DNA from: Paraphysomonas bandaiensis
Lineage: Eukaryota; Protista; Chrysophyceae
Direction: 5' to 3'
Length of the DNA stretch: 64,000 nt
NCBI GenBank assembly: GCA_965644295.1
Contig: CBFFRP010000412.1
Coordinates: 1-64,000, forward strand
Made by a program: the position numbers and the translations under genes. The notes beneath the pieces were generated by a model. The model was given only the letters and a program-made list of their open reading frames with translations, had not been told where the DNA came from and made no database searches. Positions 4,483 to 47,020 of this stretch are shown in pieces (the first letter of the stretch is position 1; each line of letters begins with the position of its first letter).

Positions 4483-4499
4483 TTACAAACTTGTATTAC

Positions 4500-5213: not shown

Positions 5214-5885
5214 CTGCCTGGTCTTAAATTACGTCCATATTGTTGATCTCTAAGAGTGTGATCTGGTCTCGAAGGATAAGGAAGTCAGTAGGCATGGGAT
5301 ATGAGGTGTGAGCGTCTGCTACCAGTTACACTCCAGTTCCAGATGTCTGACGTCAGACGATGTATATGCATAAATCATATTATGCAGCAGAACTAAACAA
5401 AATCATTTTGCAATAGATTAGTCCTGTATTTAGAGATTAATAATCAGGCTTGCGTAAAAGTTAATTGGCGAGAGGTATCTAACACTATAATAATAGTGAC
5501 TATTTACCAAACGTTCAATAATTATTGTCAATTAATTGCCTTCAAGATATTGCTTTTTCGAACAGCTTTCTGAACAATAATCTCATCCCAAAGATGTCGA
5601 TATGCATCTTAGTAACTTTACATGGCAACACACACAGTTGTGTATGCAATATAATAAATATAGTAATCGCTCATAATTGTGTCAACAAAGACTGTAGATA
5701 AGACATAAGACTACAAAAATATAATGAAGAAATTTTTGGTTATATGATGTTGAAACAGACAATATGGCATTGTTTCGTTAACTTAAACATTATGTCTTCC
5801 TAATTGCAGAACACACAATAAACTTTGAACATCAACATTTGCAGGAATTGAAAAACAGCTGCATCGAAAATACGTAGATAATGAT

Positions 5886-7618
5886 CTACGCAAACGCGAA
5901 TGTTGCGTCCCTGCGTTTAGAAGGATGTAATCGAGCATATATAGCTTCCTGAAGTGCTGGATCTTGCTCAATCTTTTTCAGAAGAGGCTACATGGAATAT
6001 ATAATTTAAAGAATTAACTCTACAAGTATACCATGCTACATACCTGATTCAACTCCCTTTCTCTCGAACTCAGTCCGTTTCTCATGTCATCCGACTGTCT
6101 GCGGCGCTTTTCTTCAATTTGAGCGTCCAGGCAACGCTTCGTCTCTAAAGCCTTTTGTCTTTTGAGCTCTATTTGTCTCTCTTTTTCTTCTTTTTCTTTA
6201 AGTGAATCTTGTAAGAATTTTGCTCTCATTTCAGAACTTTCCTGACGTGCATTTCCGCGACTTCGTTCTTTCTCGCGAATAATTCTCAGATTTTCCTCAG
6301 CTGCAAGGCGAGTGCGTTCTTTACTAGCTTCAGCACGCCTGCGACTTTCTTCCTCCTCCGCCTTATTTTTACGTTCAATTTCTTCTTGAAGTCGAATTTC
6401 ATTCTTCAAGGCCGTTTCTCTTTCTTTCGCGCCAGCCCCTTCCGACGAATATTTGCTACCGTATTGATTCATTTTCTCCATACGTTTATTGAAAGCCTCT
6501 TTCCTCGCTTGCTCCTCTCTGTCCAATTTCGCTCTAATGAAATGTTAAACACATATTAAATAAAGTGAGACATATATACCGATACTCTTCTTCCATTTTC
6601 TTTTCCATTTCGTACTGCTTCTTGATAGCCTCCTTCTTTGCTGCTTTTACACGCTCGTTTTCGAGCCGTAACTCCTCCTGGGAAGCCTTTTGCTTCATCT
6701 TCCTAATTGCCTTGAGGTCCTCCTCTTCTTGTGCACGCGCTTTGGCTCGTCTCATGTCAATCTGGTCCTCCAAAATACTCTGTTCTCTCTCCATTTCTCG
6801 ACGGCGGCGACGCTCTTCAATTTGTTGCTCTATTAAAGCACGGTCATGCTCAAATTTTTGCACTTTCATTTGCTTTACAGCTTCCTTCTCACGCTCTGCT
6901 GCTTCAGTAACCCTATAAGCAGCACAATTACACAAATGGATAATGATACACCTGTTTATAACCTTTCCACTTCCTGTCGGACCCTCACTTTTTCTTCATT
7001 GGCCTTTTTCTTACGCTCATCTACCATGGCAAGTTGTTGGTCAAGCTCGTCTCTAAATTTGAGTTTTTTGAGCTGTGCTAGATCTCTCTCTCGCTTGTTT
7101 TGCTCTTCCAGTGATATGGTTTGAACAGCATTCAATACAGACCACTGGTTGGGGTCAATATCAAATCCCCGGCTACTACTATTATTTATGCTCCCACTGT
7201 GTTCGGCTACGTTCTTTCCTTCACGCGTCGAGGAATGGTCCTCCGGGCCACCATCAGATCGTCGCTGTGAACGATCCTTAACAGAACGCTTGTATGATGT
7301 TGTTTCGCTCTCAACTTGTTGTTCAAGAGTTGAGACAATACCTGGGTTTTCAATGTCATCACAGCTTGAAATGAACTCATGCACAACTGATTTAATCAGC
7401 TTGTTAAGCTGGGAATTCGGTTGCCGTGATCCATACTTTGCCTGCATTTGCTGAAATAAGAGGCATTCTAGTCTTGACTTTTTAGACGTAGTGTTCTCTT
7501 TTTGTAGTAGCTGACGAGCTTTAGCCTTTGTGGGTGTGTTGATCTTTGATTTCGAATACGTTTTGGCAGGTTTGCGAGTATTCTCCAGCCGGCTCACAAC
7601 ATAATGAGGATCGTTCAT
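5886..7618 (-). CDS. Coiled-coil, trichoplein/TPH-like protein (multi-exon, possibly ciliary)
   Basis: ORFs 6956-7762, 6534-6935 and 6020-6526 are separated by short introns. The last exon PLLKKIEQDPALQEAIYARLHPSKRRDATFAFA* ends at 5886. Probable start is MNDPHY. Confidence 0.75.
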
Positions 7619-7977
7619 AAGTAATTTGAATGATATAAATATACAATATTTTAAAACGTGTTGGGTGGAATGAGATACTAACAACACAAGCAGTTCTGAG
7701 CTCTTGTTTTCACACCTATACATATACACATACACATACATATATATACGTCTTTGCGGCAACGGAAAGCCGTTTTAATTTATTGAAAAAGAAAGTTAAG
7801 CATCAGGAGCAGCAGGACTACTGGAGGAGGTCAACAACTTACTCTGTACACCGTATACCAGTACTGTATACGGTATACCAGTGAGTAGGAAGTGCTCTGT
7901 ATACCACCATGGGCGGATGTGCACTCCCTGAGTAGATACTTTAAGATGTACGTGAAGTAAATACATAAGTTACCTGA

Positions 7978-8877
7978 ATGCGCGTGCTAGTCACTGTCAC
8001 TTGCATTGTATTATTATTTTTAGAGTATTCGCACGCCTTATGCTCTCATCTGGAAATGCGACAGGTTTCTTCTGTAGGTTTAGGCATTGTAGCTGGCAGG
8101 GACTTCACAAAAGGTGAAGTACTGGAAACCGCTGTGGGTGTCAGGGTCAGAAGTGACATAATCAAGAAATCGGTGTTATATGATTACGCATATAAACATG
8201 AACCCTATTATTCGGATATTATTTTCGGGAATGTAATGATTTATAACCATCATGCCAATGGCGATATCGAAATAATACTGACGAGCACTCATTCTAATGA
8301 TAAGTCTGTATTTTTAGTAAATGTTAGAGCTGATGTTGATTTTGCTAAAGGGCAGCAGATACACAGCTCTTACGGCAATACAAGTTGGTTTGTCTCGCGT
8401 AATATTACTATTTTATCAACGAGTGATATGTACGTTGCGAATGTGGCTATACCAGGATGTCCTTATATGAATACTGCATATATCGGAAAGAGAATGGTGG
8501 CAACAAAACATATTTTTTGTGATGATATAATTGAGGTCTCGCGGGCAATTATTATTCCTGGTATTCTGACATTTAAAAACGCATTGGAGCGATTCGTGTG
8601 CTACCAAGAGCAATCAAATCTGGGCGCCCTCCTATTACTCGGAAATGGAGCACTCTATAGAGGCACTTCTCTAGTTGAGGCAAATGTTAAATATGAATGG
8701 TTTTCTAATTCTGATTCATCATTTGAGTGTGACGAAGTGTCTCTAGTGTCATTCACGGCATTGCGAGATATATACCCTGGTGAGGAACTACTAGTTCCAT
8801 TGAAATTAGAATCTGGTAGCAGGGGAATAATGAGAAAGCGAATAATAGACGATGCATTTTCTATGTGTTGTTTCTGA
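7978..8877 (+). CDS. Signal-peptide protein with two tandem vSET/bacterial-like SET domains
   Basis: Hydrophobic leader MRVLVTVTCIVLLFLEYSHA. SET1: GLGIVAGRDFTKGEVLE...IYNHH...GQQIHSSYG..WF. SET2: VATKHIFCDDIIEV...LGNGALY...ANV...FTALRDIYPGEEL. Intronless. Confidence 0.8.
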   Translation: MRVLVTVTCIVLLFLEYSHALCSHLEMRQVSSVGLGIVAGRDFTKGEVLETAVGVRVRSDIIKKSVLYDYAYKHEPYYSDIIFGNVMIYNHHANGDIEIILTSTHSNDKSVFLVNVRADVDFAKGQQIHSSYGNTSWFVSRNITILSTSDMYVANVAIPGCPYMNTAYIGKRMVATKHIFCDDIIEVSRAIIIPGILTFKNALERFVCYQEQSNLGALLLLGNGALYRGTSLVEANVKYEWFSNSDSSFECDEVSLVSFTALRDIYPGEELLVPLKLESGSRGIMRKRIIDDAFSMCCF

Positions 8878-23238: not shown

Positions 23239-23619
23239 ATATAAAGGAGCTACTAACAACAGTGACGAATAAAGAATTAATCTTTATAATAGTAAAACAA
23301 TGTTGTGATTATTAGAGTGTAAGTAAACACGATAGAGTGAGAATTATGAATGACAATATAGAACATAACTATCATGCACAACGGAATAGTAAGAAGTGTA
23401 ACTTATAATGACGACGTTATGATGACGATCATGTATCTTCGACAGATACTCTCTCTAATTCAGTTCATGATATATTTCATTGAACATTATAACTCACAGA
23501 TACAATCTTGTATTAAGCTGTCCACAGACGGAACACCCACCGACCTAAGTACCATCACCACTCCGTCCACCAGACCACTTCCACAACTCCATACTGCTGA
23601 CTGGGACAGGGACTGGCAA

Positions 23620-23990
23620 AATAAAGTTAACATCGCGTACTCCGAAAAAGAAGTCAAAAGCCTATCCCTATATGTGAAGAAAAATTTAGCAACTGACACC
23701 ATCATAGCTGAGTACAAAGGTGACCGCATTCCGACTGTCGAGACGCGCACACTCACACGCGCCGCACAGACTTTATAGTCCAAGACAGCACGGGCTCTTT
23801 TCCCATAGACGGATACGACTATGACCGTCAGCAAGTAAAATGTGCAGCGGGGTACATCAATGATCCTCTTGACCCAGATCTGGCGAATGTAAAGTTCCTC
23901 ACGAAAGACAAACGTATACATATATGTACGCTACGCCCCATTCGTAAAGACGAAGAAATCCTAATTAACTACGGACATCAGTACTGGTGT
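23620..23990 (+). pseudogene. SET domain within the LINE ORF
   Basis: LSLYVKKNLATDTIIAEYKG (frame 1). After one frameshift near 23760: IDG...AAGYINDP...ANVKF...IHICTLRPIRKDEEILINYGHQYW. This frame stays open into the endonuclease. Confidence 0.85.
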
Positions 23991-24143
23991 GATCCACGCT
24001 GGCCTTTAGAGATCCTTATTCAAGCCAGAGAGGGTTATGCAAGAGACATCCGAGGGACATCCAACGATGCATGGGATAGGATTATCGCTGACAAAAGAGG
24101 TTCAACCATCGAACATCAAGGCAACACTCCTACAGACACAGGA

Positions 24144-24965
24144 CTCCGACTCTCCACTTGGAACACAAATGGAAATCCAGTATCGTTCAGAAGCAAACTA
24201 AAGGCCATTATCCGGCATTTCAACAAGCAACAGTTAGACATACTACTGCTGCAGGACGTGAGACTAACATGTACTCAAGCCCGCTTCTTCGTGCAGACCG
24301 TTGAGGACGCCATTCAAGGATCTAGGGTATGCTTATTTCTCAACAAGACCTACAAAGTCACCAACCGTGACCCACTCATGGGAGGTACTGCAGCCATTGT
24401 GAGTGAGAGATGGAAACGCCGCCTAGCTTCCACCAAAGCGGACTTCACTGGCCTTGGTCTAGTCGCGAGACTGGAGTTCAAACCTCCCCTACACAAACAC
24501 TGGTGATAATAAGCGTTTACCTACCACCTAAACCATCCACCCCTGGCTCTTGTACCTTATGGAGCAAACTGACCACGATAGGGAAAGCGACCCGCGACAC
24601 TAAACCGGTTGCCCCATATGACCTCCTCTGCAACATCATCACTAAATGGGTTACCAAGGCCCGGGCCAGAGGTCACACGGTACTCATTGCAGGCGACTTT
24701 AACGGATCCATGGAAACGCACACCACGAGTAGAGATATACGCCCACTAGCCGGTAAACTCCAGCTGTCGGCGCCACTAATCACACAATTACTCCCACGGC
24801 AAGCTTTTCACACATTCCACAGATTGGACAAGGGAATATCGCGTATCGACCACATACTACATACGCCCCTTCCACAGCATATGCGAATCACAGACACCGG
24901 ATGCCCCAATTCCCCCACCTTAATTGCAGAAGTGTTTGATCATAGGCCGATTTGGGTTGGATTCA
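24144..24965 (+). pseudogene. APE/EEP endonuclease domain
   Basis: LRLSTWNTNG, DILLLQD, GGTAAI, IISVYLPP, IAGDFN, SRIDHI, FDHRPI. Confidence 0.92.
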
Positions 24966-26059
24966 ATATTACTGTAACACAAGATCTCTCTTCCCCAGAG
25001 TCACACTTAAAAATACCTCCTCGCCTAAATATCAACCCAAGGGATCCTGAGGAGGTAAAAGCGTACACTGCCAAACTTCTCATGCTACACGCCCTTCTGC
25101 CACCCATAGACAAGAATTTCAGCACAACACTAGACCCAGAGACTGCAGCCACCCGACTAGCGGCGATACATCACATCACCTTGCAGGCAACGCTTACAGC
25201 AAAGGGTCCCCGCTACACACGTCGCACGAAGCTCCATGACCGGTGTCAGCGAATTCGTTCACATTTTAAAGATGGTTTCTCCCCAGAAATGAGAGTAATT
25301 CAAGAAGGAATGGTCATGGTAATAAAGATAGCTCAGAAAATGTTTAATTCAGCTGGATATAAAAGACACGGATGGCGTGGATCCCCATTACGCAATCCAA
25401 TATGGCAGGAGCGCGGGAACTCGTACCTCCAAAAATCCACGGGACCTGCGAAAGGAATAGCCGACATCAACTTCAGGAATGATTATCGCTCAGCAGACCC
25501 CAGAGCCATTCTGAGCTGGACTGCCAAACAAGTCACCAAGAAGAACCTTCTTCTACACCTTGCCATTCGGATGCGAGGACTCTTGCACGGACGAGCCAGG
25601 ACGGAGATGCGAAAGAGGCTCACGGACCGCACCAACCATATGGAAGCACTACTAGTAGAGAACAGAGAAGACTACAAGCAGTACTGCAGAAGATAGGACT
25701 TAAAATCAAAACTCCACTACGACTAACGACAGTGAGAACTACTGATGGGACCCTTCTCACTTCCCCGCAAGACACCTACGAAGGAATCAACAAACACTTT
25801 CGAGTACACCACGCGGAACCTGCAGGACTGGACCCTGTAGCACAAAGACTACAGGATGAACCCACCTGCTGGTGGAAAACCCTCCTTGACCCCCAGTCGG
25901 TGACTTCCCAGGAGCCCTCCATCCATGCTCGAACATACCCCTTCCCCTACAACACGGGCTACGACGTGCACTATATGCACTAAAGTTAAACCAGAAATGG
26001 CGGACCTATTCGAAAAGGCGTTAGAGAGAAGGACATCACGCACGAAGAATTCTACTCCA

Positions 26060-27130
26060 CCTTGCATTCCATATCCCTCAACCGGGCCCCCGGACCCTCC
26101 ATGGTCTCATCCAACATGGTCAAATCCTGGCCTCCAGCCATCATACAACAGGAAGCATTCACCCTCATCAAGTCGCTCTGGAAGCACAAACACGTACCTA
26201 CTTGTTGGTGGCGAGACAGAGTTATGACCCCCATACTTAAGAAACCAGGAGAACCATCCCTTTCCAACCTTCGACCAATCGGCCTACTCGAAATATCAAG
26301 GAAAATTCTGACAAGAATAATCTCCCACAGGATATACTCACACAGTCTGGGAGGAACAGCAGGTCCTACACCCGTCCCAGCATGGATATCGCTGGAGAAA
26401 TGGCACAGACACGGCCATCTTACGGGTTCTCGCGGCCTCAGAGGCAGCCAGACGTCACAATGCCCAAAACATATGCGCGCTCTGGGACTTCAGAAAAGCA
26501 TTCGACTCCATATAACACCTAATCTAATGAAACTAGCATGGGCACGGCTCGGAGTTCCCGATGCAGTGGTTGAATGGTTTGGAGACTTAGACGCTGGGGG
26601 TCTCACATTCCCATGGACGCCGTTCATGGCGAACAACATGGAGCCACGCTCGTTGGCAGCCCTTTTAGCTACCGACGGACAGTTCGTACTAGGATTTGAG
26701 GCCGCGAGAGGGATCACACAGGGGGGCACCGAATCCACTTGTGCCTGGGTGGCCCTACACGATATCCTTCTTACATGATGGTTAGACCTAGATCTTAGAG
26801 CAATCTGTCCAGCACCACTCCTCTACCGACCCCGAACTTACAGAAAAAAGTCTCCTTCGCGGATGACATCACCACCATAGACGTGTCTATATCACTCAAC
26901 AAGCCCAGGAAACGGCGGTACGAATGTCGGCGTTCTGCAGCTTCTCGGGAATGGAACTCTCGGTACCTAAAGTTATCTGCACTCTCTTCCCTCGCTTACG
27001 GGAAAATATCGCCCAGGTCAAACAAACCGGACACATTACCTTATACGACTGGAATTGGAGACCCCAAACTGTACCAATTCAAACAACTCATGAATCGATA
27101 CACTATTTGGGGGCTGATCTGCCACTGACA
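26060..27130 (+). pseudogene. Non-LTR reverse transcriptase domain (frameshifted)
   Basis: APGPS, PILKK, NLRPIGLL, QHGY, WDFRKAFDSI, RGITQG, FADD (about 26857), GMELS, HYLG. Confidence 0.93.
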
Positions 27131-27689
27131 CCTACAGACACAGACTCATACAATTGGTGTACAAACTACCTTAAGGCAGCGGGCACTCGCCTTGGGATCA
27201 AGCACGCCTCAGCGGGTTGCAAAGTCATGGTTATAGAGACCTAAATCATCCCCACTCTACTTTACAAGGCCACCAAGGCTTCTTGGCCCCTACAATGTTA
27301 CAAGGACATCGATTCCACCTGCGCAACCCTTTACAGGAAAGCACTAAGCCTGAGTCCTGGATACACCCCACGGAATTGATCTACCTCTCTCTCAGGCATA
27401 ATGGACTTGGAATGAAACGCTTCTCAGATTCCGCTCAAGAACAAAAATGGGGCTCCCTACAGCGCGCCATAATCCTAGGCGGGGATGCCGGTGACGCAGC
27501 GCACTTTATTCTAACACAGACTACCACTCCGTACCAAAACTACCACCGCTTTGCCTTAAGCCTGCGGGAATGGGGTACGGAGGTTGGCCTCACACTCCAC
27601 CAACCCGACAATCCGGAACCTCAAGATACCAACACCCTGACCAACATTATCCGCGCATTAGGACTGGATGATGTAAACGCGGATATCTA

Positions 27690-28200
27690 TAAGGCAATCT
27701 TCACGGACGGCTCATACAGGCCTACTACAGCCCTATCCCCGCGCCGCATTACGCATGTACACCCACGCACAAGATGGGCACATTATTATGGAGGAGCGGC
27801 GGCAGTCTGGCTCCCCCCGGAGGATGAATGGAAGACCGGTACAACTAAAATACTGCAATTAGAGACACCCTTCAGCGACGTACCTGGACTTCTTGGCCCG
27901 TATGCATACGAGCTCATGGGAGCAGCAATGGCGCTTATACTGTCTGCGCGACTCCCATCACGCATACCGATAAATACGGACTGTAAGGCCGTCTGCATAC
28001 GCACACGCGAAGCACTTTCCACCAGACATCGGGCACTGGGGCATCGTGCCAAACGTGTACTGCTCGAAAGCATTGCAGCAAACAACGATTGTACAAGGAC
28101 AGTAGCATGGGTCCGATCACACCCCGAACGACGTACCTCTGATGAGTCTGTGAATGGACATATGAAGACAAAGGAATTTACATTGCCGACGCAGTAGCAG
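27690..28200 (+). pseudogene. RNase H domain of the LINE
   Basis: IFTDGS, AYELMG, NTDCK, WVRSH, IADAVA. A CSDC..LKHMC knuckle follows at about 28647-28690. Confidence 0.88.
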
Positions 28201-30629
28201 GTGAGGACTGGCTTGAGGTAGATAGACTACTCGGACGACAAAATTACACTGTAACATAGAAGTGGACCAAGCCATTGAGAGAATACTCACCGAGGGTTTA
28301 TGGCACTGGCGTCTAACTGGGGAACGACGGCCGTATCGCACTAGCCCCCTGCTCACGGATTCCCAATATCCCTCCGTAATCAACGGACGCTGGAGGCCTA
28401 CTACACAGCTCACCGAGACCAACGCTACGGTCACAATCCTGACCGGGTTCCTGGATACTGGAAAGAGAGCGGAGCACTACTTCCGCGCAAACTGGCGCAA
28501 GCAGAGATGGTGGACCATCAAAGGACAAAGTGAGTTCCCACCTGCGCCAGCGAGTACTCAATGCAGCACTGGCATGGGACAAATCCTACAGCATAGGAAG
28601 AAACCGGGCGAAAACCAAACACGGACTCGATATGGCTAAAGCCGCATGTTCTGACTGCGGGTTTAGACTAGACTCACTCAAGCATATGTGTCTAGACAGT
28701 ACAAATGACAACATAACGCAGATAAGGGAGTGTCTGCATTTCACAGCCACAAAAACGCGCTTCTAGAAGAAATGAGAAATCCGGAACTACCCCAATGGAC
28801 CACCACTGTACTCCAGCGACTCTCCAGCAGGGCCTGGAACCCTTCCGTGCCACAGGTGGAGGGATTCTGGACGGGTACCATCACAACTACACAGCTTGAA
28901 ATGGTTTTTGGAGATCACATCCATGAGTCACTGACATCCCAAGGAGTGCGCAGCATCGAATCAGCGATCATCAAATTACTTCTACCGCTTTTCGCTGCAG
29001 CAAAGCTAATGATCCAAGATCGAGTAGAAGATACGTTACCCTACAGAAAGGTCCCCCAAGGCTACTACCGCGGCCGCGTCCAAAACACAGACAGAAATGG
29101 AAACGCCCAAGGGTGCTAAGATTAATAGGAATCCACAGACAAACCGAGACTGGAACACCGCCCACCGCACATATGAACCCTACCAACCATACGCAAAGGA
29201 CCATAGCACCGGACCGTATGAAACCAACAGGCCCTAGACAACGGCGACGACGTCTCCGGCAACTCCACCTATGCCCAACGCCCAGACGGTGCATGGCGAC
29301 ACCGCCACATTCCACCACACCATCAACCTCTCAGTGCACACATCTAGTGCTCGGTACGCTCAGGACCTTAATACAGAACCCTGTACCTCAGAGCCAGGCG
29401 GAACCTTATCCCAAGGGGAGACCCCGGACAACACGCGCCAGTGAGTCCTCAGACACACGAGCAGGGCGAACTCACACACAACATCAAGAACGGAAGTGGT
29501 TGCACCTTGGTGCTTGCGGCGACGCACAAGCAGCTTCTGTAGCGCTAAATAGTAGGATAATAGAATTTGTGCTGATTAGTTATGGGTAGAGGTCTAACTA
29601 GTAGATCTAGCATTCAACTAGCCACTGTATCGGAACGAGTTTTTAACGCCTATTGCTAAATAAAAAGACTTTCAATGTATATGTATTAAGCTGAATCCTA
29701 ATATGACGTGGCGGATACAATATGAAAAAAAACAGATTTAGGGGTCTTCAGATGATGGGTTAATGGAGGGGTAGTTGCTGAATGCTGAAATATAAAAATA
29801 ACAGTTTGTAAGCATATCATTACAAGCTTTTCTTGCTTGTGTTTGACATTACGCTTGCTATTTATGTACGGTGGCAAAATTCTCTTCCTCTTCTGGTAAA
29901 AACACAGTTCAACAAAAGTTATACCTTTTTAGCTCGCTCCAAGCTCAATGTCTTTATTGAGACCGTGGTTGTGTCCCATCAGCGGGTCCGGGCTCAGACT
30001 GTTCCACACACACTCTATGCCTCAGCCTGTACCCCCCTGCACCAACACAGACACTAACAAGAAGGGCAGTTGAGGACGTCCGAGTGTCTCCTCCAGACCA
30101 TCATCATAATCTCGTGCATACAGTAGGTCTATCAGAGTACCCGACCTTGGTAGACCTAGTTCTGTTGCGCTGTCCCACTCTCCTCAATCAGATGTTGCCT
30201 CTTTTGCACCATCACACTCCCTCTCGACTCCCTGTTGCTGGACACACCGGATGACCCTCATATCCCACCCCTGTCCAGCTATACACTCTCTTGCATGTGC
30301 TCTCTACCGTTGGCTAAGACAGCAGAAGAGTCGATTTCGACGCTTCTTCACAGTAGGCCATAACCTTTTGCAAGACCTTCATCCACATACCTCCGAGCCA
30401 CTTGGCACAATGCCTAAAGGAAGGCCACCAGATCGCCAATATAAGCAGGGTATAGTACTGTGTTCCCCTGGTTGCCGTGAGGTACATAAGGCAGTCCCTG
30501 ATGCAAATTGCACACAATGTATGTGTAGTCTTAAGCGTTCCAGTGTTGTAGTAGTAGACTTAGATCACTGCTTTCACTTGTCATGCTGTACGTTGCACAA
30601 CGTGTCCCCTACTTACACATCTATCATAT

Positions 30630-38663: not shown

Positions 38664-39075
38664 TATCAAGATATTGTTAATTTTTGTTTGGGAGCTTGCG
38701 GTATCACAGTTGATTGTGCTCTGTCATTATTTCAATACTTATCCTGTCCCTTGTTTTTATATATTTTTGTAATGGCACACTGTCGTGTTGGCGCATTTAT
38801 TTTGTGGCAACGCCTTTTCGTTCACCAGTGTAATGCCGATGTCGAAAGAGGGCTTAAGTTACTTGTGTTTCATGGAGATATACGAAGTTGTGTGATAATT
38901 TAATTTCATTGTTGCTCAATTAATTTAAATTATATCTTTTGTTATTATCCTCAGTCGTTATAGGCAATTTGTTGCTGCGTCACTGTTATTTTATACGTAC
39001 CTGGACTACTTGTAAAATATATATATTCTTCTGTGTATTCCCGTTCTTCTAATCTTCGGCATAGATAATCACTAT

Positions 39076-39340
39076 TATTAGGATTCAGCTTAATACATGA
39101 TTGTATCTGTGAGTTATAATGTTCAATGAAATATACCATGAACTGAATTAGAGAGAGTATCTGTCGAAGATACGTGATCGTCATCATAACGTCGTCATTA
39201 TCAGTTACACTTCTAACTATTCCGTTGTGCATGATAGTACGTTCTATATTGTTATTCATAATTTTCACTCTATCGTGTTCATTACTTACACTCTAATAAT
39301 CACAACATTGTTTTACTATTATAAAGATCAATTCTTTATT
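39076..39340 (+). repeat. 5' LTR (TATTAGG...CTTTATT)
   Basis: Identical by eye to 44546-44810. Confidence 0.96.
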
Positions 39341-39351
39341 TGGTAGCGAGA
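39341..39351 (+). promoter_or_regulatory. Primer-binding site, probably initiator tRNA-Met
   Basis: TGGTAGCGAGA abuts the LTR and is complementary to a CCA end with an A1:U72 acceptor stem. Confidence 0.75.
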
Positions 39352-42300
39352 TGTCAGTTAAAGTTACAAGTTACGACTCAACCGACTCGGATTCGACAAC
39401 CGACAAGCGAAAGGACTCAATGCCAAAATTCGATGCGAAGAACTTCTCCAGGTGGCAGAAGAAGTGCCGTGCATGGTTCTATCGCAAGCCTAAGATCGTT
39501 TATACTCTACAGAACGATCACCCAATTGAGCCTGAAGCAGGAGAAAACTCAGATGACGAGGACTACCAGTATCGACTCGAACAGTATCAGGATGCGAAAC
39601 GATATTATGATGAAGGTAATAACTACCTATGGTCAGTCATTGCAAGCTCTATCATTGGTCAGAATGAAGAGGCTGAAGGGATTTTGGAGAACGTCCCCGA
39701 TGGAGACGGTAAAACCGCCTGGACGGACTTGCTCAACCACTTCAAAGAAAAAACGACTAACGACGTCATCACTGATCTGATTGGCCAGTTTCAGAGCATA
39801 AAAATCAAAAAAGGTCAGTCGATAATCAACTTTCTTGACGCTGTCGAAAAGCTCCGAAACAAGCTGATTAATTATGGTCATCGGATAAGTGACCAAGATC
39901 TCATATCACGCATTCGACAAGGCCTGGTATCCAAAGAAAATATGACGTATCGTGAACTGGCGATCAACCTGCAGATGCACCCTATCGATGACTACAAAAC
40001 ACTCATACGCAGACTACGCGGATTAGGAAGCTCGTCTGTCGGAATGCTCTTGTCAAGCAACGAAGAATCAAAAACCGACAGTATTCAGCTTGCAGCCTCA
40101 AAACCCCCATTTTCCCGAAATAAAGTGAATTCTAAACGCAAAAAGGGGACATCTTTCAGAAACCGTTCCAATAAACCGAAACATGACAAGAGAGCTGACA
40201 AGGACATTACGTGTTTCCGATGCGATGGAAAAGGACACATCGCTTCAGAATGCAAACACTCATGGGAAAGGATCCAACAAATGAAGAGTTCCTCTGGAAA
40301 CAAATCAACCAGTAGGAAATTCAAAAAGGTTAGATTCCAGACCCACCAGAGCACTGAAAACGACGAATCCGACCAGTTTGCAGATTATGAAGACAGTGGT
40401 CCACTACAACAGAAAGGACGAGACTTCGGAGGAGTCGGATATCCAACAAACGACGAAACAAACTTCGTTTTTGATCAAGAAGCCGGAATGGGAACCCTTG
40501 ATTCTGGCTGCACAGTCTCCATCACACCTGAAGCCGGATACATCACCAATTATGAGGAATGCCTCACCGACATTCAAACAGCTAAGTCAGGATCAACTAT
40601 GACCTCTTCAGGACATGGAAGACTTGGTATTATCCCCAAGTGCAAGCACGTGGATCATGCTTCAAGGACACTCGTGTCCATCAGCCAATTAGATGACCTA
40701 GGGTATAAAATCTTGTTCGGAAACCAATCAGTTGAGATATATAAAGATGAAATACTGCTATCAAAGGGTAAGAGAGTTGGAGGCCTATATGAAATTCCGT
40801 TAACAGACCTCGGTACTCCTATTGACGTATCCCACCTTGCTTCAACTGCTTCAGGCCCACTCGCAACTCTAGCACATAAGAGATTGGCACATTCTTCAAT
40901 TGGACTCATACAGAAAGCTGTACAGTCAAAATTAGTAACGGGTATTAAGTTAACGAAGTCGGAGATGAATGCTACTTCTTTATCGGGTGGCCTATGTGAT
41001 GGTTGTGCTAGTGGTAAATCTCATCGCCGAAAACATAGACACGCTATCAGACAAATGCTGCTCAAGCGTGTAAGAAGAGCAAATGAGCTGGGGGAGCTAG
41101 TAGTAGCCGATTTTTCTGGACCTCATGCACCAGAGGCAATCATTACTGGCAACCGTTACATACTCGGGATGACTGATGTAGCTTCCAGACACCAATGGGA
41201 CTCCTACGGACCAACGAGAGATGAAGATTTTGTCATCCAATCCATCCAGAAAGTTGTTATGTATCTACATAGTAAAGGCAAACGCCTACAACATTATCAT
41301 GCGGATGGCGGGAAGGAACTGGTATCAAAAAAAGTTCTAGAGTATCTTCAATCAATAGGGGCTACATGGACTTTCAACTCCCCGTATACCCCTGAGGATA
41401 ACCCATTCCAAGAGCGATCATGGCGGACAACTAAAGAACGAGCACTCAGCAGCCTTATCGACTCTGGACTCCCACCGAATTTCTGGGAACAAGCCTCAAG
41501 GGCGACAATACACATCAAGAACAGGTTACCGTGTCAAACAGCTAAAGGATTTATGTCCCCACTCCAATTCATCGAAAACGAAATACCAGACTTGAGTTAT
41601 GCCAGAATATGGGGATGTAAATGCTTTGTGAATATCGATTCCAGTCTCCGAAAGAACAATTGGGACAGACATAGCTGGCCTGGGTATTTTATGGGCTATC
41701 GAGAGGATGGTCCTGGATATATAGTCTTTGTTCCCGCATTAAGAGATTTTGTTATATCAGGACATGTATTTTTCAACGAATGTGTTCCACCAGCGGATAA
41801 GAGATATTTTAAAGAGATAAATGAGATCTTCAGAGAGAATGAGACCTCCAGGACAGTAGAAAGTTTCAAATATCTCATAGGCCTAGCTCATGTAGATCCA
41901 GACGATGGATTAACATATGTAACAACTCAAATAAAGCTCAGAAAAGGATTAATCGCAGCGTATCGTGGTCTAGTGGACGACAGCGGTGACAAGACACGAC
42001 TCATCCAGCTCGACGACCCCATTCATGCTGCAGACGTCGAAAAGTACACTGAAGAATACATAGAACTCAAAGCAGTTGGTCTCAAATGTAATACTTCTCG
42101 ATCGAAAACCCCAATACATAAATCCAGCAAATCAGATCGAGACCCCGATACAGTTAATGGATCTCCAGCGCCAGCCGCTACTTCCAGGGGGAGTGGCGTG
42201 AATCGAAGACATCATGATGCCGCGCAGGAGAGAATCAGCAGCCATCGGTGTGAACCTACCCACTCCGATGCAAAGATAGCGAAGACTCGCCCTTCGAAAA

Positions 42301-44345
42301 AATTCAATGGGAATCTAGTGCCGAATCCGGCACCACACGGTCAAGTGGATCGTGTGCGTCAGCGTGTGGCCAAACGCTGCAACAAGCCTGCTGATTCATC
42401 GGGAGATTGGGAAAATCAGGATACACCTGAAGGGCCAAGTAAGGTCCGTGCTACAGCAAAACAGCAATTTTTAGCTGGTAAAAAGAGTGTTCTCCGAAGC
42501 AAGAGAATGGCCAGGAAACGGGTAATTGTAAATATACATAAACTTGGTGATGGTGTATATACATGTGATGTAAATGCCAAACATGTAGTAAATCATATGG
42601 CACATGACACACAATGTATATCAAAATTACATACAAACAATATTGATATTGTTATGCATGCTATCAGTAATTGCGATGACATTGACGAGCTAACCGATAC
42701 ACCAAAGAGTGTTCAAGATGCTATTTCAGGTAAATATAAACAGCAGTGGATCGATGCTATCAATAGAGAAATATCCACTCTTCAGAGGAAAGGGTGCTGG
42801 AGATACACTGCGTTACCACCTGGAGCAAGAGCCATAAAGGGGAAACTCATATTCAAAATAAAAAGAAAACAGAATGATATCAAATTCAAGGCTCGACTAG
42901 TCGCACAGGGTTTTACTCAAATCCAAGGCATCGATTACAATGATACATACAGCCCCGTCGCGAAGGCTACATCACTACGTACAATTATTGCCCTTTCGAC
43001 TATTATGAAACTCAAATTGCACCAAATCGATTTCACAACTGCGTACATCAATGCTGACCTCGAAGAGGACATATACATGCATCCCCCTCCTGGCATGGAC
43101 GTCCCTGACGGAAAAGTCCTCAAACTGATGAAAAGCATCTATGGTCTAAAGCAAGCAGGTCTTAACTGGTATAAGTGCTGTACAAATTTTATGCTAGATA
43201 TGGGTTTCACCAGACTAATATCTGACCCGTGTATATTCAAAAAGCAGATTAATGGCAGGATTATGCTAATAGCCATGTATGTGGACGATATTATTATAGC
43301 ATCTACATCCGACACTGATATCCAACAATTCAAAGACCATTTATCCAAAAAGTTCGAAATTACGGATCTCGGACTCCTAGATTATTACTTGGGCATCTCC
43401 ATTCATCAAGATTTTGACAAAAATATCACAACTCTCAGTCAGGAGCAGTATGTCAGAAAACTACTGGACAAATTCAACATGTCCGACAGTAAACCCATGT
43501 CAACACCTATGTTACTGTCTTTCAACTATGATTTACATGAATACAATCATCTTTCAGAGTCAAATCAAAGTTATGTTCAGAATTTCCCCTACAAGGAACT
43601 CATAGGTTCCCTGATGTATCTAGCTGTATGCACTCGACCGGATATCGCTTATGCAGTCAATACTCTTGCCAGATTTTCTGATATGCCTAATCTAACTACC
43701 TGTAATGCTGCGTTACATGTTCTTAGGTATCTCAAAGGCACTGCTAAGCAAGGATTGATATATTCTGGATCCCACATAACATTGTCAGGATACTGCGATA
43801 GCGATTGGGCACGGTGTCACCTCACTCGACGGTCCACTACAGCTTTTACATTCTTCATAGGTAATTGTCTTATATCATGGCAATCTCGATTACAGACAAC
43901 TGTGGCATTGTCATCTACTGAAGCTGAGTATATGGCTCTATCGTCAGCAGCTCAGGAAGCATTATGGCTACGCTCTTTATTATCAGAAATTGGTTTCAAA
44001 CTTCCATTCTCAACAACTATTTGGTGCGATAATAAAGGGGCAGTCCAATTATGTTACAATCCTACTCATCATCGTCGTACGAAACATATTGCGATACGGT
44101 ATCATTTCATTCGAGAAAATATTGCCGAAAACCAATTGACTGTTGACCATATTCCCACCACGTCAATGTTAGCCGATCTTCTCACGAAACCACTAGGAAC
44201 AACTAATTTTCTTCAATTGCGAACTACATTGATGGGGGGAGCTGGGTTCGACATCCCATCCAGCAGCAACAGAAAGCGATCAACAACCTCAGAGACACCT
44301 AAATCACAATTAACAAGCCACAAGCGACCTAGGTGGCTAGTTTGA
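39351..44345 (+). CDS. Copia Gag-Pol polyprotein (1664 aa)
   Basis: CFRCDGKGHIASEC knuckle, protease LDSG, HKRLAH..CDGC, integrase D-D-E (ADFSGP/HADGG/QER), RT YVDD, RNase H DSDW/EAEY/DN/ADLLTK. IN-before-RT order. Confidence 0.98.
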   Translation: MSVKVTSYDSTDSDSTTDKRKDSMPKFDAKNFSRWQKKCRAWFYRKPKIVYTLQNDHPIEPEAGENSDDEDYQYRLEQYQDAKRYYDEGNNYLWSVIASSIIGQNEEAEGILENVPDGDGKTAWTDLLNHFKEKTTNDVITDLIGQFQSIKIKKGQSIINFLDAVEKLRNKLINYGHRISDQDLISRIRQGLVSKENMTYRELAINLQMHPIDDYKTLIRRLRGLGSSSVGMLLSSNEESKTDSIQLAASKPPFSRNKVNSKRKKGTSFRNRSNKPKHDKRADKDITCFRCDGKGHIASECKHSWERIQQMKSSSGNKSTSRKFKKVRFQTHQSTENDESDQFADYEDSGPLQQKGRDFGGVGYPTNDETNFVFDQEAGMGTLDSGCTVSITPEAGYITNYEECLTDIQTAKSGSTMTSSGHGRLGIIPKCKHVDHASRTLVSISQLDDLGYKILFGNQSVEIYKDEILLSKGKRVGGLYEIPLTDLGTPIDVSHLASTASGPLATLAHKRLAHSSIGLIQKAVQSKLVTGIKLTKSEMNATSLSGGLCDGCASGKSHRRKHRHAIRQMLLKRVRRANELGELVVADFSGPHAPEAIITGNRYILGMTDVASRHQWDSYGPTRDEDFVIQSIQKVVMYLHSKGKRLQHYHADGGKELVSKKVLEYLQSIGATWTFNSPYTPEDNPFQERSWRTTKERALSSLIDSGLPPNFWEQASRATIHIKNRLPCQTAKGFMSPLQFIENEIPDLSYARIWGCKCFVNIDSSLRKNNWDRHSWPGYFMGYREDGPGYIVFVPALRDFVISGHVFFNECVPPADKRYFKEINEIFRENETSRTVESFKYLIGLAHVDPDDGLTYVTTQIKLRKGLIAAYRGLVDDSGDKTRLIQLDDPIHAADVEKYTEEYIELKAVGLKCNTSRSKTPIHKSSKSDRDPDTVNGSPAPAATSRGSGVNRRHHDAAQERISSHRCEPTHSDAKIAKTRPSKKFNGNLVPNPAPHGQVDRVRQRVAKRCNKPADSSGDWENQDTPEGPSKVRATAKQQFLAGKKSVLRSKRMARKRVIVNIHKLGDGVYTCDVNAKHVVNHMAHDTQCISKLHTNNIDIVMHAISNCDDIDELTDTPKSVQDAISGKYKQQWIDAINREISTLQRKGCWRYTALPPGARAIKGKLIFKIKRKQNDIKFKARLVAQGFTQIQGIDYNDTYSPVAKATSLRTIIALSTIMKLKLHQIDFTTAYINADLEEDIYMHPPPGMDVPDGKVLKLMKSIYGLKQAGLNWYKCCTNFMLDMGFTRLISDPCIFKKQINGRIMLIAMYVDDIIIASTSDTDIQQFKDHLSKKFEITDLGLLDYYLGISIHQDFDKNITTLSQEQYVRKLLDKFNMSDSKPMSTPMLLSFNYDLHEYNHLSESNQSYVQNFPYKELIGSLMYLAVCTRPDIAYAVNTLARFSDMPNLTTCNAALHVLRYLKGTAKQGLIYSGSHITLSGYCDSDWARCHLTRRSTTAFTFFIGNCLISWQSRLQTTVALSSTEAEYMALSSAAQEALWLRSLLSEIGFKLPFSTTIWCDNKGAVQLCYNPTHHRRTKHIAIRYHFIRENIAENQLTVDHIPTTSMLADLLTKPLGTTNFLQLRTTLMGGAGFDIPSSSNRKRSTTSETPKSQLTSHKRPRWLV

Positions 44346-44535
44346 GTTACACGGAGTTTTTACCATTTTTTTTTATTTTTATTCAATACATGATGCTGGA
44401 CTAGAAGGATGGTCTCACAATATGGCATCTCTGCAGTTCGCTTATTATTGACTAGTGACTGCTACTCTGGTTTTTACTCTCAGTGTGCATAAGTTCATAT
44501 TCTCTCTATTATCTACGATTCACTGATTATTTCAT

Positions 44536-44545
44536 TGAGGGGGCG
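44536..44545 (+). promoter_or_regulatory. Polypurine tract
   Basis: tgagggggcg immediately before the 3' LTR. Confidence 0.85.
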
Positions 44546-44810
44546 TATTAGGATTCAGCTTAATACATGATTGTATCTGTGAGTTATAATGTTCAATGAA
44601 ATATACCATGAACTGAATTAGAGAGAGTATCTGTCGAAGATACGTGATCGTCATCATAACGTCGTCATTATCAGTTACACTTCTAACTATTCCGTTGTGC
44701 ATGATAGTACGTTCTATATTGTTATTCATAATTTTCACTCTATCGTGTTCATTACTTACACTCTAATAATCACAACATTGTTTTACTATTATAAAGATCA
44801 ATTCTTTATT
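44546..44810 (+). repeat. 3' LTR
   Basis: Direct repeat of 39076-39340. Confidence 0.96.
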
Positions 44811-47020
44811 ACTATCTAGAACGAATGAAAATTGTAGAGTGTCATAACTGGTACCAACTTAAGAAGACAAAACTAGCTAAATTCTAGAGACAATGATAAC
44901 ACTCTGATAGAAAGCACTGCATTATAAAAAATAATATATTAATATATATATAATGTTGTGATTGGTTTACAGTTTGTTGAAAATGAATTGTCATAATGTT
45001 TATATTGCATCATTGAAGTGTATTTAGAGAGCACCAGAATGAGAGTAATTTGTTGTTGAACTTTGAGAGATGTTTATATTTTAAAAATTCTATGTACACA
45101 ACAACCATTATCTGAATGATGTTCTGTCTAGTGGGGATGGGTTAGGTATGGTATGTTGAGTTTTGCTGTTTAAGCAATTAAAAGCTGTAATTCTAAGATA
45201 TTGGAATTATGACGGTTACTGGAGAATACAGTAGTGGTTAACTGTATTATGAGAAGTAATGAGAACTGAATATATATTGACCATACGAGAAGATAGTGAC
45301 GATATAAGATCGTACTAGAAATGAGTGGTAGTAGAGATAACGTGATGTATTGTTTATTATATTTATTATAATCTTCCCTAATTTTATAATAAGATTCATG
45401 AGTGAATACACGTCCAGTTAACTTAGTAAATCATTCAATTGTGTCATGGTAGTACAGTACACTGTATAGTGCGTATAGTGGTGTGTTGTATTCAGCAGTG
45501 GTGCGTGGAATAGGTAAGAGCGTTACATTTTTCCAACAGGAGATGAAATGCTTGGTCCAATACTATGTAGTGGGGGTTGGAAAAATGAGAACTTTGTATC
45601 ACTTTCACCACACTTCTTAGTAGGTTCTGTTGCAGCACTGATTAGTTTTACCGTTTTACCCAGCTTGTTTTAAAATTGTCATTCCTATCTAGTTGCCAGT
45701 GTTATTTATTGTGGAGATTGGTTAGCGACTCAGGGGACACTTATTTTAATCTAGATTATAGACATCTACTTCATGTAGTACTTAATCAAAGTAGCATGTA
45801 GCTGCTGTGATTGGACACCATCCAGCAACAGGTACGAAATATGTAGAAAAACTCAATATATATTTACTGTGGTAATGAGAATTCCTGAAAGCAATCGACT
45901 CACTCAAAATGTAGCAGATTTAGTGCGAGTTTTTGATGAATTAAAGGCGTTGTTAACAGTCAAGATGATAAAGGTGACAAAAGAACTGAACTAAGAAGTA
46001 ACAGGATAGAAAGTACAGCAAAGTACTGCAAGGCAAAATTTGTTATGAAGACCTTGCTGAAGATATGCAAGGATAGAGGTTTTGGGAAAGCGTGTGACGT
46101 AGCAAAACTGCCAGATACGTCAGCCAATAAATTATTTAGTGACTGCTTAAGTCCGCAATTAGCAGTGGCGATGATGTGTCAATGAGTAGAATGGCTGAAT
46201 TATCCTATATAATACTTTATAACAAGCTGAATAGTATTCGAAGTAATTAATGAGCGATACGCAGTGCATAAAAATGTTCTGTGTCAACCCATGAATTGGA
46301 GTGAGTTCTCTCCGACTTTCATCACTCCTGTAAGTACCGTTTGAGCGCCATAAATTTAATGGAGCACATACATATATATACATACATATAGTGCGTATAT
46401 TCCCTAACCCATATATATATTATACATAGCCATACTGATAGCTGTGGTAGCTTAAGCTCTGAATTCGCCTTATTCTACCATCTTTACTATGTTGTTTTGT
46501 TGTCTCTGAGATCATAGGGAGGAACAACTCGCCTTGTTTATGATCCACACACACAATTCCGTCGAAATACGTGTACGGAAGAGCTTAGATCAATGCTTTA
46601 CTGATGTTATAAGATCATTAATTCATGTGTGCAATCTCATAGTGATGTCATGTATGCATCACTAATTCATCAAGCAACAGATCCAGAAACACATATCTAG
46701 ATATGTGGTATGGTATTATGTATTATGTAATACATCCCTTTATACATCATAATCCCACTCACTGCAGTATACCGGTATACGGTATATTCCTACGCTTTGT
46801 GATGTGTATTCTGTTTTTATGTATTCACAGATGCGCTGTAGTGTTGTTTGTATGTACTCTGTATGATGCATGATGCGCATGCACTCTGTATGACTACATA
46901 CATACTCCTCTATCTCCTTTTGAGAATTAGCATTGCTTTAGATGGGATATATTTGCAATCAATTTGCTATTAAATTTCCAAATTATAACAGTCCAGTCAG
47001 TGGTTACAGTGAAAAATATA

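What the first reader, a model, noticed from the sequence alone, without database searches (positions are those of the whole stretch)
23521..29680. Non-LTR retrotransposon carrying a SET (lysine methyltransferase) domain fused upstream of APE-RT-RNase H
Seen: from 23763 one stop-free frame runs ...IDG...AAGYINDP...ANVKF...CTLRPIRKDEEILINYGHQYW..., then about 50 aa, then directly LRLSTWNTNG...LLQD (APE). The N-SET strand (LYVKKNLATDTIIAEYKG) lies one frameshift upstream. The ORF track misses most of this segment because the frame has no start codon. The domain is inside the element, because the element is bounded by a 12-bp TSD and interrupts a solo LTR whose two halves rejoin. Known: canonical LINE ORF2 begins with APE; SET-transposon fusions such as SETMAR are domestications of DNA transposons. 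I do not know of a described SET-APE-RT-RNH LINE. Inference: the element may write or read lysine methylation at its insertion site to evade silencing or target chromatin, or may methylate its own or host proteins. The NH motif reads ND and the GxG motif is degenerate, so catalysis is uncertain.
Basis: partly seen in the sequence, partly recalled or inferred. Interest (0 to 1): 0.92.

Follow-up and report, generated by a model that had tools for sequence, protein, structure and literature searches.

The report
LINE retrotransposon carrying a SET domain
This is a dead, front-truncated copy of a jumping gene (a LINE) from a marine protist. Intact relatives encode a conserved PRDM-like SET lysine-methyltransferase domain just ahead of the endonuclease and reverse transcriptase, so the element probably carries its own protein- or chromatin-modifying module; that activity is untested.

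Summary
Window 23521-29680 is one non-LTR retrotransposon copy with a 12-bp target-site duplication, inserted in a Copia-type solo LTR. It is 93% identical to intact copies and 5'-truncated about 827 codons into their ORF. A 2-nt insertion at about 23758 splits its SET domain.

The SET domain is a family trait. The genome gives at least 100 protein matches in three subfamilies, and the intact 2000-3700-aa ORFs scanned read SET, APE, RT in one frame. SET evolves under purifying selection like APE. At least 16 environmental proteins also combine this SET type with APE.

A 94-sequence profile matches the PR domains of PRDM12 and PRDM9 best, and the AlphaFold model (pLDDT 89) is a SET fold. The catalytic Tyr is invariant. 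The His of the NH motif is Asp or Glu in 87 of 94 sequences and never His. The second GxG glycine is lost in this genome's subfamilies, so catalysis is plausible but unproven.

RNase H rests on a D-E-D-H-D motif and one weak profile alignment.

Precedents are partial: a SET ORF in a Phytophthora proto-Helentron, and a 'SET RVT_1' LINE-like gene model of Symbiodinium in a supplementary table.

The scan had already found this family in at least 8 other windows of this genome.

The parts
23268..23520 (.). Left part of the interrupted Copia-type solo LTR. Its last 12 nt (23509-23520) are the left copy of the TSD.
   Evidence: At least 40 matches at 94-96% identity, many as pairs 5.47 kb apart, including window 39086-39340 and 44556-44810. 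Empty-site continuity in intact LTR copies.
23521..29680 (+). Dead, 5'-truncated copy of an A-subfamily LINE (SET-APE-RT-RNH-like-Zn knuckle-3'UTR).
   Evidence: Blastn to intact copies C146 and C143 runs 23521 to 29676/29684, 93.1% identity, 44 gap openings. No internal LTR or TIR. Common 3' end ...CTTTCAATAT(A) without poly(A) in 12 copies.
23660..23987 (+). SET (PR/SET-like) domain, split between two frames.
   Evidence: Pfam SET 25.7 bits on the C-terminal half. The full domain scores 34.5-35 bits in intact copies. Alignment A1. Coordinates projected from L032.
23758..23759 (+). 2-nt (CG) insertion that frameshifts the SET domain in this copy.
   Evidence: DNA alignment with A and B intact copies.
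23988..24143 (+). Conserved post-SET helical extension (YW..RW..EIL.QAR...W..L..K) and a short linker to APE.
   Evidence: Invariant columns W150, W155, I159, L160, Q162, A163, R164, W179, K186 in A2. Helices 157-184 at pLDDT 86-95 in the model.
24144..24880 (+). Apurinic-type endonuclease (APE) domain, broken by a frame change near 24410-24503.
   Evidence: Pfam Exo_endo_phos partial hits on both pieces. 38-46 bits against a cut-off of 24.5 in intact copies.
26237..27120 (+). Reverse transcriptase domain, in several frames.
   Evidence: Weak RVT_1 hits on window pieces. 55-66 bits against a cut-off of 29.6 in intact copies. An FADD motif reads in the frame 26799-27125.
27700..28210 (+). RNase H-like region (FTDGS ... 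YELMG ... NTDCK ... RSHPE ... IADA).
   Evidence: D23, E88, D111, H158 and D180 are invariant in 5 divergent sequences. hhalign to E. coli RNase HI puts the first three on D10, E48 and D70 (E 0.0044, probability 8%). No Pfam or PDB sequence hit.
28647..28700 (+). Cys/His motif (CxxC...H.C..C in intact copies). The last Cys is Ser in this copy.
   Evidence: Translations. Read from the sequence; not tested further.
29442..29680 (+). 3' untranslated region.
   Evidence: The ORFs of intact copies end at the position equivalent to about 29441. 2029 first-look candidates for 29200-29680, 96-99% identity in the 40 scored.
29681..29703 (.). Right copy of the TSD (29681-29692) and the last 10-11 nt of the interrupted LTR.

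Best explanation
Shown: window 23521-29680 is a dead, 5'-truncated insertion of a LINE family that was active recently in this genome. In intact members one giant ORF (about 2800-3700 aa) encodes an N-terminal region of about 830 or more aa, a PR/SET-like domain with a conserved helical post-SET extension, an APE endonuclease, a reverse transcriptase, an RNase H-like region and a Cys/His motif. The SET module is an old, selected part of this LINE lineage.

Inferred: the SET module is a working S-adenosylmethionine-dependent lysine methyltransferase. It is delivered with the endonuclease and reverse transcriptase to the site of target-primed reverse transcription. There it methylates a nearby protein substrate. 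The most likely substrates are histone tails at the new insertion, a host repair or silencing factor, or the element's own protein. The effect would favour completion, expression or escape from silencing of the new copy. PRDM9, whose PR/SET domain marks chromatin at the sites where DNA breaks are then made, is the nearest functional picture. Substrate and effect are unknown.
For: Family trait: at least 101 protein matches in the genome, in subfamilies at 91, 67 and 46% identity, many with open frames of 2000-3700 aa. SET, APE and RT all score above the Pfam cut-offs in one ORF in three subfamilies.

Recent activity: intact A copies are 99.8-100% identical and 23 B copies have a median identity of 99.05%.

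Selection: SET pN is 0.18, 0.33 and 0.15 against a saturated pS of 0.67-0.75. This is the same as APE (0.16, 0.36, 0.15) and close to RT. SET and the post-SET part are conserved down to relatives at 29-31% identity.

Fold and kinship: the AF2 model has pLDDT 89. Foldseek gives SET7/9, MLL and PRDM3 at E about 1e-9. The 94-sequence profile hits PRDM12 at 7e-20 and PRDM9 at 4e-16 over the full domain.

Catalytic features: Tyr145 is invariant in 94 of 94, Asn108 is in 87 of 94, and E-E-L before the Tyr is conserved. In the profile alignment, PRDM9 carries Cys, not His, at the NH position; PRDM9 is an active enzyme (my own knowledge).

Distribution: 16 of 170 retrieved environmental proteins have this SET plus APE. 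P0012, P0015 and P0019 have it with RT.

Independent DNA: a 3740-nt contig of another data set spans SET-APE with 6 differences.
Against: No enzymatic evidence exists. The His of the NH motif is never present: Asp in 79 and Glu in 8 of 94. The second glycine of the GxG SAM-binding motif is Ser in subfamilies A and B and Ala in C, although 87 of 94 relatives keep it. The module could therefore have lost cofactor binding in this genome. PRDM12, the best PDB match, has little or no intrinsic activity (my own knowledge).

RNA evidence is thin. Metatranscriptome contigs lie mostly on the 3' part. Only one 189-nt contig lies on SET, and DNA carry-over is not excluded.

The position of SET relative to APE and RT varies among distant relatives. 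This argues against a tight mechanical coupling with the endonuclease.
Confidence: 0.5

Rival explanations
1. The SET module is conserved but not catalytic. It serves as a binding module for a lysine-containing tail (histone or host protein) that tethers the ribonucleoprotein to chromatin or picks target sites, as chromodomains and PHD fingers do in other retroelements.
For: His of the NH motif is absent across the family, and the second GxG glycine is lost in all three subfamilies of this genome. The best PDB match is PRDM12, a PR domain with little intrinsic activity (my own knowledge). Purifying selection fits a binding role as well as catalysis.
Against: The catalytic Tyr is invariant in 94 of 94 sequences, and the Asn and the acidic E-E before the Tyr are kept. 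A mere binder would not need these. In the profile alignment PRDM9 lacks the His as well, and it is an active enzyme (my own knowledge).
Confidence: 0.27
2. The SET module methylates the element's own polyprotein or its RNP partners, for example to regulate processing by the upstream protease-like modules, stability or nuclear import. Chromatin is not the substrate.
For: SET sits inside a giant polyprotein next to putative OTU-like modules (earlier notes of the scan). Its position varies among relatives, as expected for a module that acts in trans or on itself.
Against: There is no direct evidence. The closest structural and sequence relatives are histone methyltransferases.
Confidence: 0.15
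3. The SET sequence is a passenger or an artefact: a host gene fragment picked up once by template switching, or a LINE nested in a SET gene, with no role for the element.
For: LINEs do transduce and capture host sequence. In the window the SET is frameshifted and this copy is dead.
Against: The same SET-APE junction occurs in at least 100 places and three old subfamilies with intact frames. It also occurs in distant environmental relatives. pN is far below pS. The TSD and the empty site place SET inside the mobile unit.
Confidence: 0.03

Closest known systems
APE-type non-LTR retrotransposons with RT followed by RNase H (I, Tad1, Ingi, LOA/R1-like groups)
   Same: APE endonuclease, then RT, then an RNase H-like region and a Cys/His motif. 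Target-site duplication, frequent 5' truncation, no terminal repeats.
   Different: A single giant ORF of 2800-3700 aa, with no separate ORF1 seen. About 830 or more aa plus a SET domain lie ahead of APE. No poly(A) tail. The clade was not determined, because no Repbase or Dfam reference was at hand. All RT relatives found are unnamed environmental proteins.
PRDM PR/SET domains (PRDM9, PRDM12) and SET7/9
   Same: Same fold. Best sequence-profile matches over the full domain. Conserved Asn and catalytic Tyr. Like PRDMs, no His in the NH motif.
   Different: Not linked to zinc-finger arrays but embedded in a retrotransposon polyprotein. Asp or Glu at the His position. It has its own conserved post-SET helices (YW..W..IL.QAR). 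Only 20-28% identity.
SET ORF of the proto-Helentron of Phytophthora infestans, and OTU domains of Helentrons, Helitrons and Ginger1 (Thomas et al. 2014, PMC4067079; Bao et al. 2010, PMC2836005)
   Same: Transposable elements that carry SET, and other such elements that carry OTU-type protease genes, some of them in a stramenopile.
   Different: Those are DNA transposons, and the proto-Helentron SET is a separate ORF of about 153 aa resembling Clr4. Here SET is fused in frame into a LINE polyprotein and is PRDM-like.
TE-chromatin domain fusions catalogued by Grau-Bove et al. 2022 (bioRxiv 10.1101/2021.11.30.470311), including Symbiodinium Smic2990 'SET RVT_1 DnaJ'
   Same: A PRDM-like SET together with a LINE-type RT in one gene model. 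The general idea that TEs recruit chromatin readers and even writers.
   Different: Only a row in a supplementary table, with no APE listed, no family analysis, no copy or selection data, and a possibly chimeric model (DnaJ). Kinship to the present family was not tested.
SETMAR, viral vSET and giant-virus SET proteins, bacterial SET effectors (LegAS4)
   Same: A SET domain associated with a mobile or parasitic genetic entity. Structural matches to giant-virus SET proteins and a profile match to LegAS4.
   Different: SETMAR is a host gene that captured a transposase. The viral and bacterial SETs are stand-alone proteins, not parts of a retrotransposition enzyme.

Membership tests
Non-LTR (LINE) retrotransposon, APE type | Reverse transcriptase domain of the LINE type | tested here: met
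   Pfam RVT_1 scores 55-66 bits (cut-off 29.6) in intact copies. Fragments are present in the window copy.
Non-LTR (LINE) retrotransposon, APE type | Apurinic/apyrimidinic-type endonuclease N-terminal to RT | tested here: met
   Exo_endo_phos scores 38-46 bits (cut-off 24.5), upstream of RT in the same ORF.
Non-LTR (LINE) retrotransposon, APE type | Insertion hallmarks: target-site duplication, variable 5' truncation, no LTR or TIR | tested here: met
   12-bp TSD and empty site. Truncation at codon about 827. About 2000 candidate 3' ends against about 7 A-type SET regions. No terminal repeats.
Non-LTR (LINE) retrotransposon, APE type | Assignment to a named clade by RT phylogeny | not testable with these tools
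   No Repbase or Dfam reference set is available. The nearest RT relatives are unnamed environmental proteins.
SET-domain lysine methyltransferases (Pfam PF00856) | Sequence membership of the SET family | tested here: met
   PF00856 scores 34.5-35 bits over 1-105 of 105 in three subfamilies and 25.7 bits for the window's C-terminal half. PDB profile hits reach E 7e-20.
SET-domain lysine methyltransferases (Pfam PF00856) | SET fold (knot-like beta fold) | tested here: met
   AF2 model pLDDT 89, pTM 0.83. Foldseek gives SET7/9, MLL, PRDM3 and SETD8 at E 1e-7 to 1e-9. Atlas SET clusters at TM 0.58-0.65.
SET-domain lysine methyltransferases (Pfam PF00856) | Cofactor motifs GxG and NH(S/C) | tested here: inconclusive
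   GxG is kept in 87 of 94 relatives but reads G-L-S (subfamilies A and B) or G-N-A (C) in this genome. Asn is conserved in 87 of 94. His is replaced by Asp or Glu in 87 of 94. PRDM9 also lacks the His.
SET-domain lysine methyltransferases (Pfam PF00856) | Catalytic Tyr in the C-terminal ELxxxY motif | tested here: met
   Tyr145 is invariant in 94 of 94 sequences.
SET-domain lysine methyltransferases (Pfam PF00856) | SAM-dependent methyl transfer to lysine | not testable with these tools
   Needs a biochemical assay.
RNase H type 1 domain | Sequence or profile membership | tested here: not met
   No Pfam hit at E up to 10. No PDB hit by single sequence or profile.
RNase H type 1 domain | D-E-D-(H)-D catalytic residues in the right order and spacing | tested here: inconclusive
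   D23, E88, D111, H158 and D180 are invariant. hhalign to E. coli RNase HI aligns the first three to D10, E48 and D70, but with E 0.0044 and probability 8%.

The most novel reading that the evidence does not exclude
A widespread lineage of LINEs in marine protists carries an active PRDM-like histone methyltransferase. It writes a chromatin mark at the site that its own endonuclease nicks, so the retrotransposon sets the epigenetic state or the repair pathway of its new copy. If so, PR/SET-type domains, so far studied in animal PRDM proteins, would have a much older link with programmed DNA breakage.
Probability: 0.2. Interest if true: 0.85.

Novelty: new variant of a known kind. Interest (0 to 1): 0.6.

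Why it matters
LINEs are thought to depend on host chromatin and repair factors. Known accessory modules in retroelements are mostly readers (chromodomain, PHD) or nucleic-acid binders. A conserved, selected SET writer-type domain inside the LINE enzyme suggests that some retrotransposons modify proteins or chromatin themselves. This gives a testable case of a mobile element manipulating lysine methylation. It would also extend PR/SET-like domains well outside the animal PRDM proteins. The family is young, abundant in this genome, and present in seawater data sets from 14 studies, so material for experiments exists. The value of this particular window is limited: the copy is dead and truncated, and the same family has already been reported from other windows of this genome.

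Tried and rejected
- A first AF2 run on a 6-sequence alignment gave pLDDT 56 and was not used. A 94-sequence alignment fixed this.
- The ESM Atlas feature search gave no usable hit.
- RNase H: Pfam at E up to 10 and PDB by single sequence and by profile all gave nothing. Only a weak hhalign to E. coli RNase HI was found.
- The OTU and SET regions of P0019 showed no significant BLASTP similarity to the A-subfamily N-terminal region or SET. The OTU reading for this genome's elements was therefore not confirmed here.
- No internal repeats in the giant ORFs by BLASTP.
- Literature searches for a SET-bearing LINE found no description. The journal version of Grau-Bove et al. is not held, so the preprint was used.
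- Passenger or nested-gene artefact: rejected on copy number, selection and boundaries.
ORFs were merged from overlapping loci in scripts, and tools were given sub-ranges instead.
- One PDB query was sent in the wrong frame and was not repeated.
- The organism could not be named: run and organism names were coded and no named eukaryotic database was at hand.
- The RT clade was not determined.
Full report
**Observation**

The segment 23724-24503 reads the C-terminal half of a SET domain (AAGYINDPL, ANVKF, EEILINYGHQYW). About 52 residues follow, and then LRLSTWNTNG...LLLQD, the start of an APE endonuclease. This piece alone passes the Pfam SET threshold (25.7 bits against 22.4) and touches Exo_endo_phos.

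The N-terminal SET strand (SLSLYVKKNLATDTIIAEYKGDRI) is in another frame, 23521-23775. Alignment with intact copies shows that a 2-nt CG insertion at about 23758-23759 causes the shift. The downstream APE, RT and C-terminal parts are scattered over the three frames.

**Boundaries**

The 12-mer tgtattaagctg stands at 23509-23520 and at 29681-29692. The left flank 23268-23520 belongs to an LTR family found as pairs 5.47 kb apart in many contigs. One such pair is the Copia element of this window (39086-39340 and 44556-44810; scan note s1-456595).

In uninterrupted LTR copies the TSD sequence occurs once and continues into the 10-11 nt that follow the right TSD in the window. That is an empty site, and it proves the insertion.

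Blastn of the window against intact copies begins exactly at 23521 and ends at 29676-29684, with 93.1% identity and 44 gap openings. Twelve copies share the 3' end ...CTTTCAATAT(A) without poly(A). No LTR or TIR lies within the element.

**A family trait, not a one-off**

The SET-APE piece finds at least 101 places in the 62.5-Mb genome. They fall into subfamilies at about 91% (A, the window's), 67% (B) and 46% (C) protein identity, and many have open frames of 2000-3700 aa. I merged overlapping loci to recover whole ORFs: 2795 aa (C143, A), 3021 and 2823 aa (C440 and C433, B) and 3731 aa (C644, C).

Pfam places SET (34.5-35 bits, full length 1-105 of 105), Exo_endo_phos (38-46 bits) and RVT_1 (55-66 bits) in this order in one ORF in all three subfamilies.

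The window copy starts at codon about 827 of the 2795-aa ORF. It is therefore 5'-truncated just ahead of SET, and full-length elements have a further 830 or more residues upstream.

Intact A copies are 99.8-100% identical over the 1140-nt SET-to-APE segment compared. Twenty-three B copies have a median identity of 99.05% over the equivalent 1155 nt. The family was therefore active recently. The A-type 3' end has 2029 first-look candidates, but the A-type SET region has only about 7 copies. This is the usual 5'-truncation bias.

**Selection**

Between subfamilies the synonymous sites of SET are saturated (pS 0.67-0.75). Non-synonymous differences are 0.18 (A against B), 0.33 (A against C) and 0.15 (within C). 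These are the same as for APE (0.16, 0.36, 0.15) and a little above RT. SET and the region after it stay alignable down to environmental relatives at 29-31% identity over the SET region, with 28 invariant columns.

**What kind of SET**

A 6-sequence profile already matched EZH2, KMT2C/D and SETD7 over the whole domain at E about 3e-8. An exhaustive profile search of 1.84 billion representative proteins returned 3824 proteins at E up to 0.001 and 467 at E up to 1e-10. Of the 170 proteins retrieved in all, 16 carry both this SET type and APE, 77 carry SET only (mostly short fragments) and 65 carry APE only.

A 94-sequence SET alignment gave an AlphaFold model with pLDDT 89 and pTM 0.83. Foldseek finds SET7/9, MLL1/3/4, PRDM3 and SETD8 at E 1e-7 to 1e-9, giant-virus SET proteins and SET clusters in the Atlas. 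The deep profile hits the PR domains of PRDM12 (7e-20) and PRDM9 (4e-16) best, ahead of KMT2C and LegAS4. So this is a PR/SET-like domain.

Column counts:

| Feature | Count in 94 sequences | In this genome |
|---|---|---|
| Catalytic Tyr (position 145) | 94 | kept |
| Asn of the NH motif | 87 | kept |
| Residue at the His position | Asp 79, Glu 8, His 0 | Asp |
| First Gly of GxG | 78 | kept |
| Second Gly of GxG | 87 | Ser in A and B, Ala in C |

In the profile alignment PRDM9 has Cys at the His position, and PRDM9 is an active enzyme (my own knowledge). The missing His therefore does not by itself exclude activity. The lost glycine in this genome's lineages is a real doubt.

The roughly 50 residues between SET and APE are mostly a conserved helical extension (invariant W150, W155, I159, L160, Q162, A163, R164, W179, K186).

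**RNase H**

No Pfam or PDB sequence match was found, even at permissive thresholds or with a profile. Five divergent sequences keep an invariant D-E-D-H-D series (FTDGS, YEL, TDC, SHPE, ADA). hhalign against E. coli RNase HI aligns the first three to D10, E48 and D70, but weakly (E 0.0044, probability 8%). I call the region RNase H-like and unproven. A Cys/His motif follows it.

**Outside the genome**

Word-based searches found eight more giant proteins from ENA and JGI metagenomes. Four hold SET, APE and RT. One (P0001) holds SET and APE only. One (P0015) has Pfam SET and RT and matches the APE part of my A2 profile. The last two (P0017, P0019) are weaker cases. P0019 also has a Pfam OTU domain at 38.8 bits.

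The spacing and order vary. SET lies directly before APE in the close relatives. It lies 270-740 aa before APE in P0015, P0017, P0033 and P0075. It lies after APE in P0027 and P0029 and after RT in P0019, which could also be read-through between tandem copies.

The intact A copy is held at 79-89% of sampled words in 15 DNA-type runs of marine and seawater metagenomes and coded organisms; 20 runs from 14 studies hold all or part of it. One 3740-nt contig of another data set spans SET-APE with 6 differences. Metatranscriptome contigs lie mostly on the 3' 2 kb, and a single 189-nt contig lies on SET. This is weak evidence of transcription, because contigs cannot exclude DNA carry-over or read-through of truncated copies.

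**Literature**

Six full-text searches found no description of a SET-bearing LINE. Two partial precedents exist.

- Thomas et al. 2014 (PMC4067079) describe a Phytophthora proto-Helentron with a separate, Clr4-like SET ORF, and Helentrons with OTU proteases. Bao et al. 2010 (PMC2836005) list OTU in Ginger1 and Helitron DNA transposons.
- Grau-Bove et al. (bioRxiv 10.1101/2021.11.30.470311) screened 172 genomes and found 823 gene models that join TE domains and chromatin domains, with SET among the less common partners. Their supplementary table 6 lists Symbiodinium Smic2990 as 'SET RVT_1 DnaJ', with a PRDM-like SET and a LINE-type match.

That table row suggests the association reaches dinoflagellates, but the paper does not analyse it. 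Repbase and Dfam could not be searched, so a catalogued consensus cannot be excluded.

**Mechanism**

Shown: the architecture, its age, its selection, the fold and the conserved catalytic Tyr. Inferred: that the domain transfers methyl groups, and that it acts at or near the integration site on histones, host factors or the element's own protein.

I put 0.5 on an active methyltransferase that helps the new copy. I put 0.27 on a non-catalytic lysine-tail binder used for tethering, 0.15 on self- or RNP-directed methylation, and 0.03 on a functionless passenger.

**Earlier notes of the scan**

The same family was reported from at least eight other windows of this genome. I tested the architecture claim independently here and agree with it. 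The OTU reading and the 'chrysophyte' label were not confirmed by my own tests. Only the motif DGYCAY lines up with the OTU Cys loop of P0019, and not significantly.

**Limits**

The window's broken SET was searched as two separate pieces.

**Verdict**

This is a real and well-conserved accessory SET domain in a LINE lineage, and a new variant of a known kind. The window copy itself is an ordinary dead insertion.

Noticed in passing
L062:2114-4498 (G000:C644, aa 518-641 of the 3731-aa ORF): The C644 lineage has a second, very divergent SET-like module about 1200 aa upstream of the main SET. Pfam SET scores 22.6 bits, just at the cut-off, with an EEILLDYG motif. No internal repeat is detectable by BLASTP.
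   Followed up: partly
L004:2470-3741 (- strand), aa 154-163; L061:1-1203 (- strand): Full-length A copies have about 830 aa ahead of SET with no Pfam hit. The motif DGYCAY lines up with the OTU Cys loop DGNCLY of the environmental relative P0019 (Pfam OTU 38.8 bits), but BLASTP is not significant.
   Followed up: partly
window 23268-23520 + 29693-29703; window 39071-44815: The interrupted repeat is a solo LTR of the Copia family that has a full copy 9 kb downstream in the same window. LTR copies are 94-96% identical across at least 40 loci.
   Followed up: partly
P0117, P0110, P0045, P0059, P0077, P0125, P0132: Some environmental proteins hold two or three tandem copies of this 'IND'-type SET domain.
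   Followed up: no
P0019, P0027, P0029: In these giant environmental proteins SET (and, in P0019, OTU) lies far downstream of the enzyme domains: after RT in P0019 and after APE in P0027 and P0029. This is either a different domain order or a gene call that reads through two tandem elements.
   Followed up: no
window 29640-29680 and L050-L060: The family ends in ...AAAAAGACTTTCAATAT(A) with no poly(A) or microsatellite tail. Target sites look A/T-rich.
   Followed up: partly
L032:3-2843 and 2804-8854 (G000:C146): In copy C146 the upstream 947-aa frame and the 2017-aa SET-APE-RT frame overlap by 40 nt in different frames, whereas copy C143 has one 2795-aa frame. This is probably a frameshift mutation in C146.
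   Followed up: no
window 28647-28700: A Cys/His motif (CxxC...H.C..C) lies downstream of the RNase H-like region. The last Cys is Ser in the window copy.
   Followed up: no
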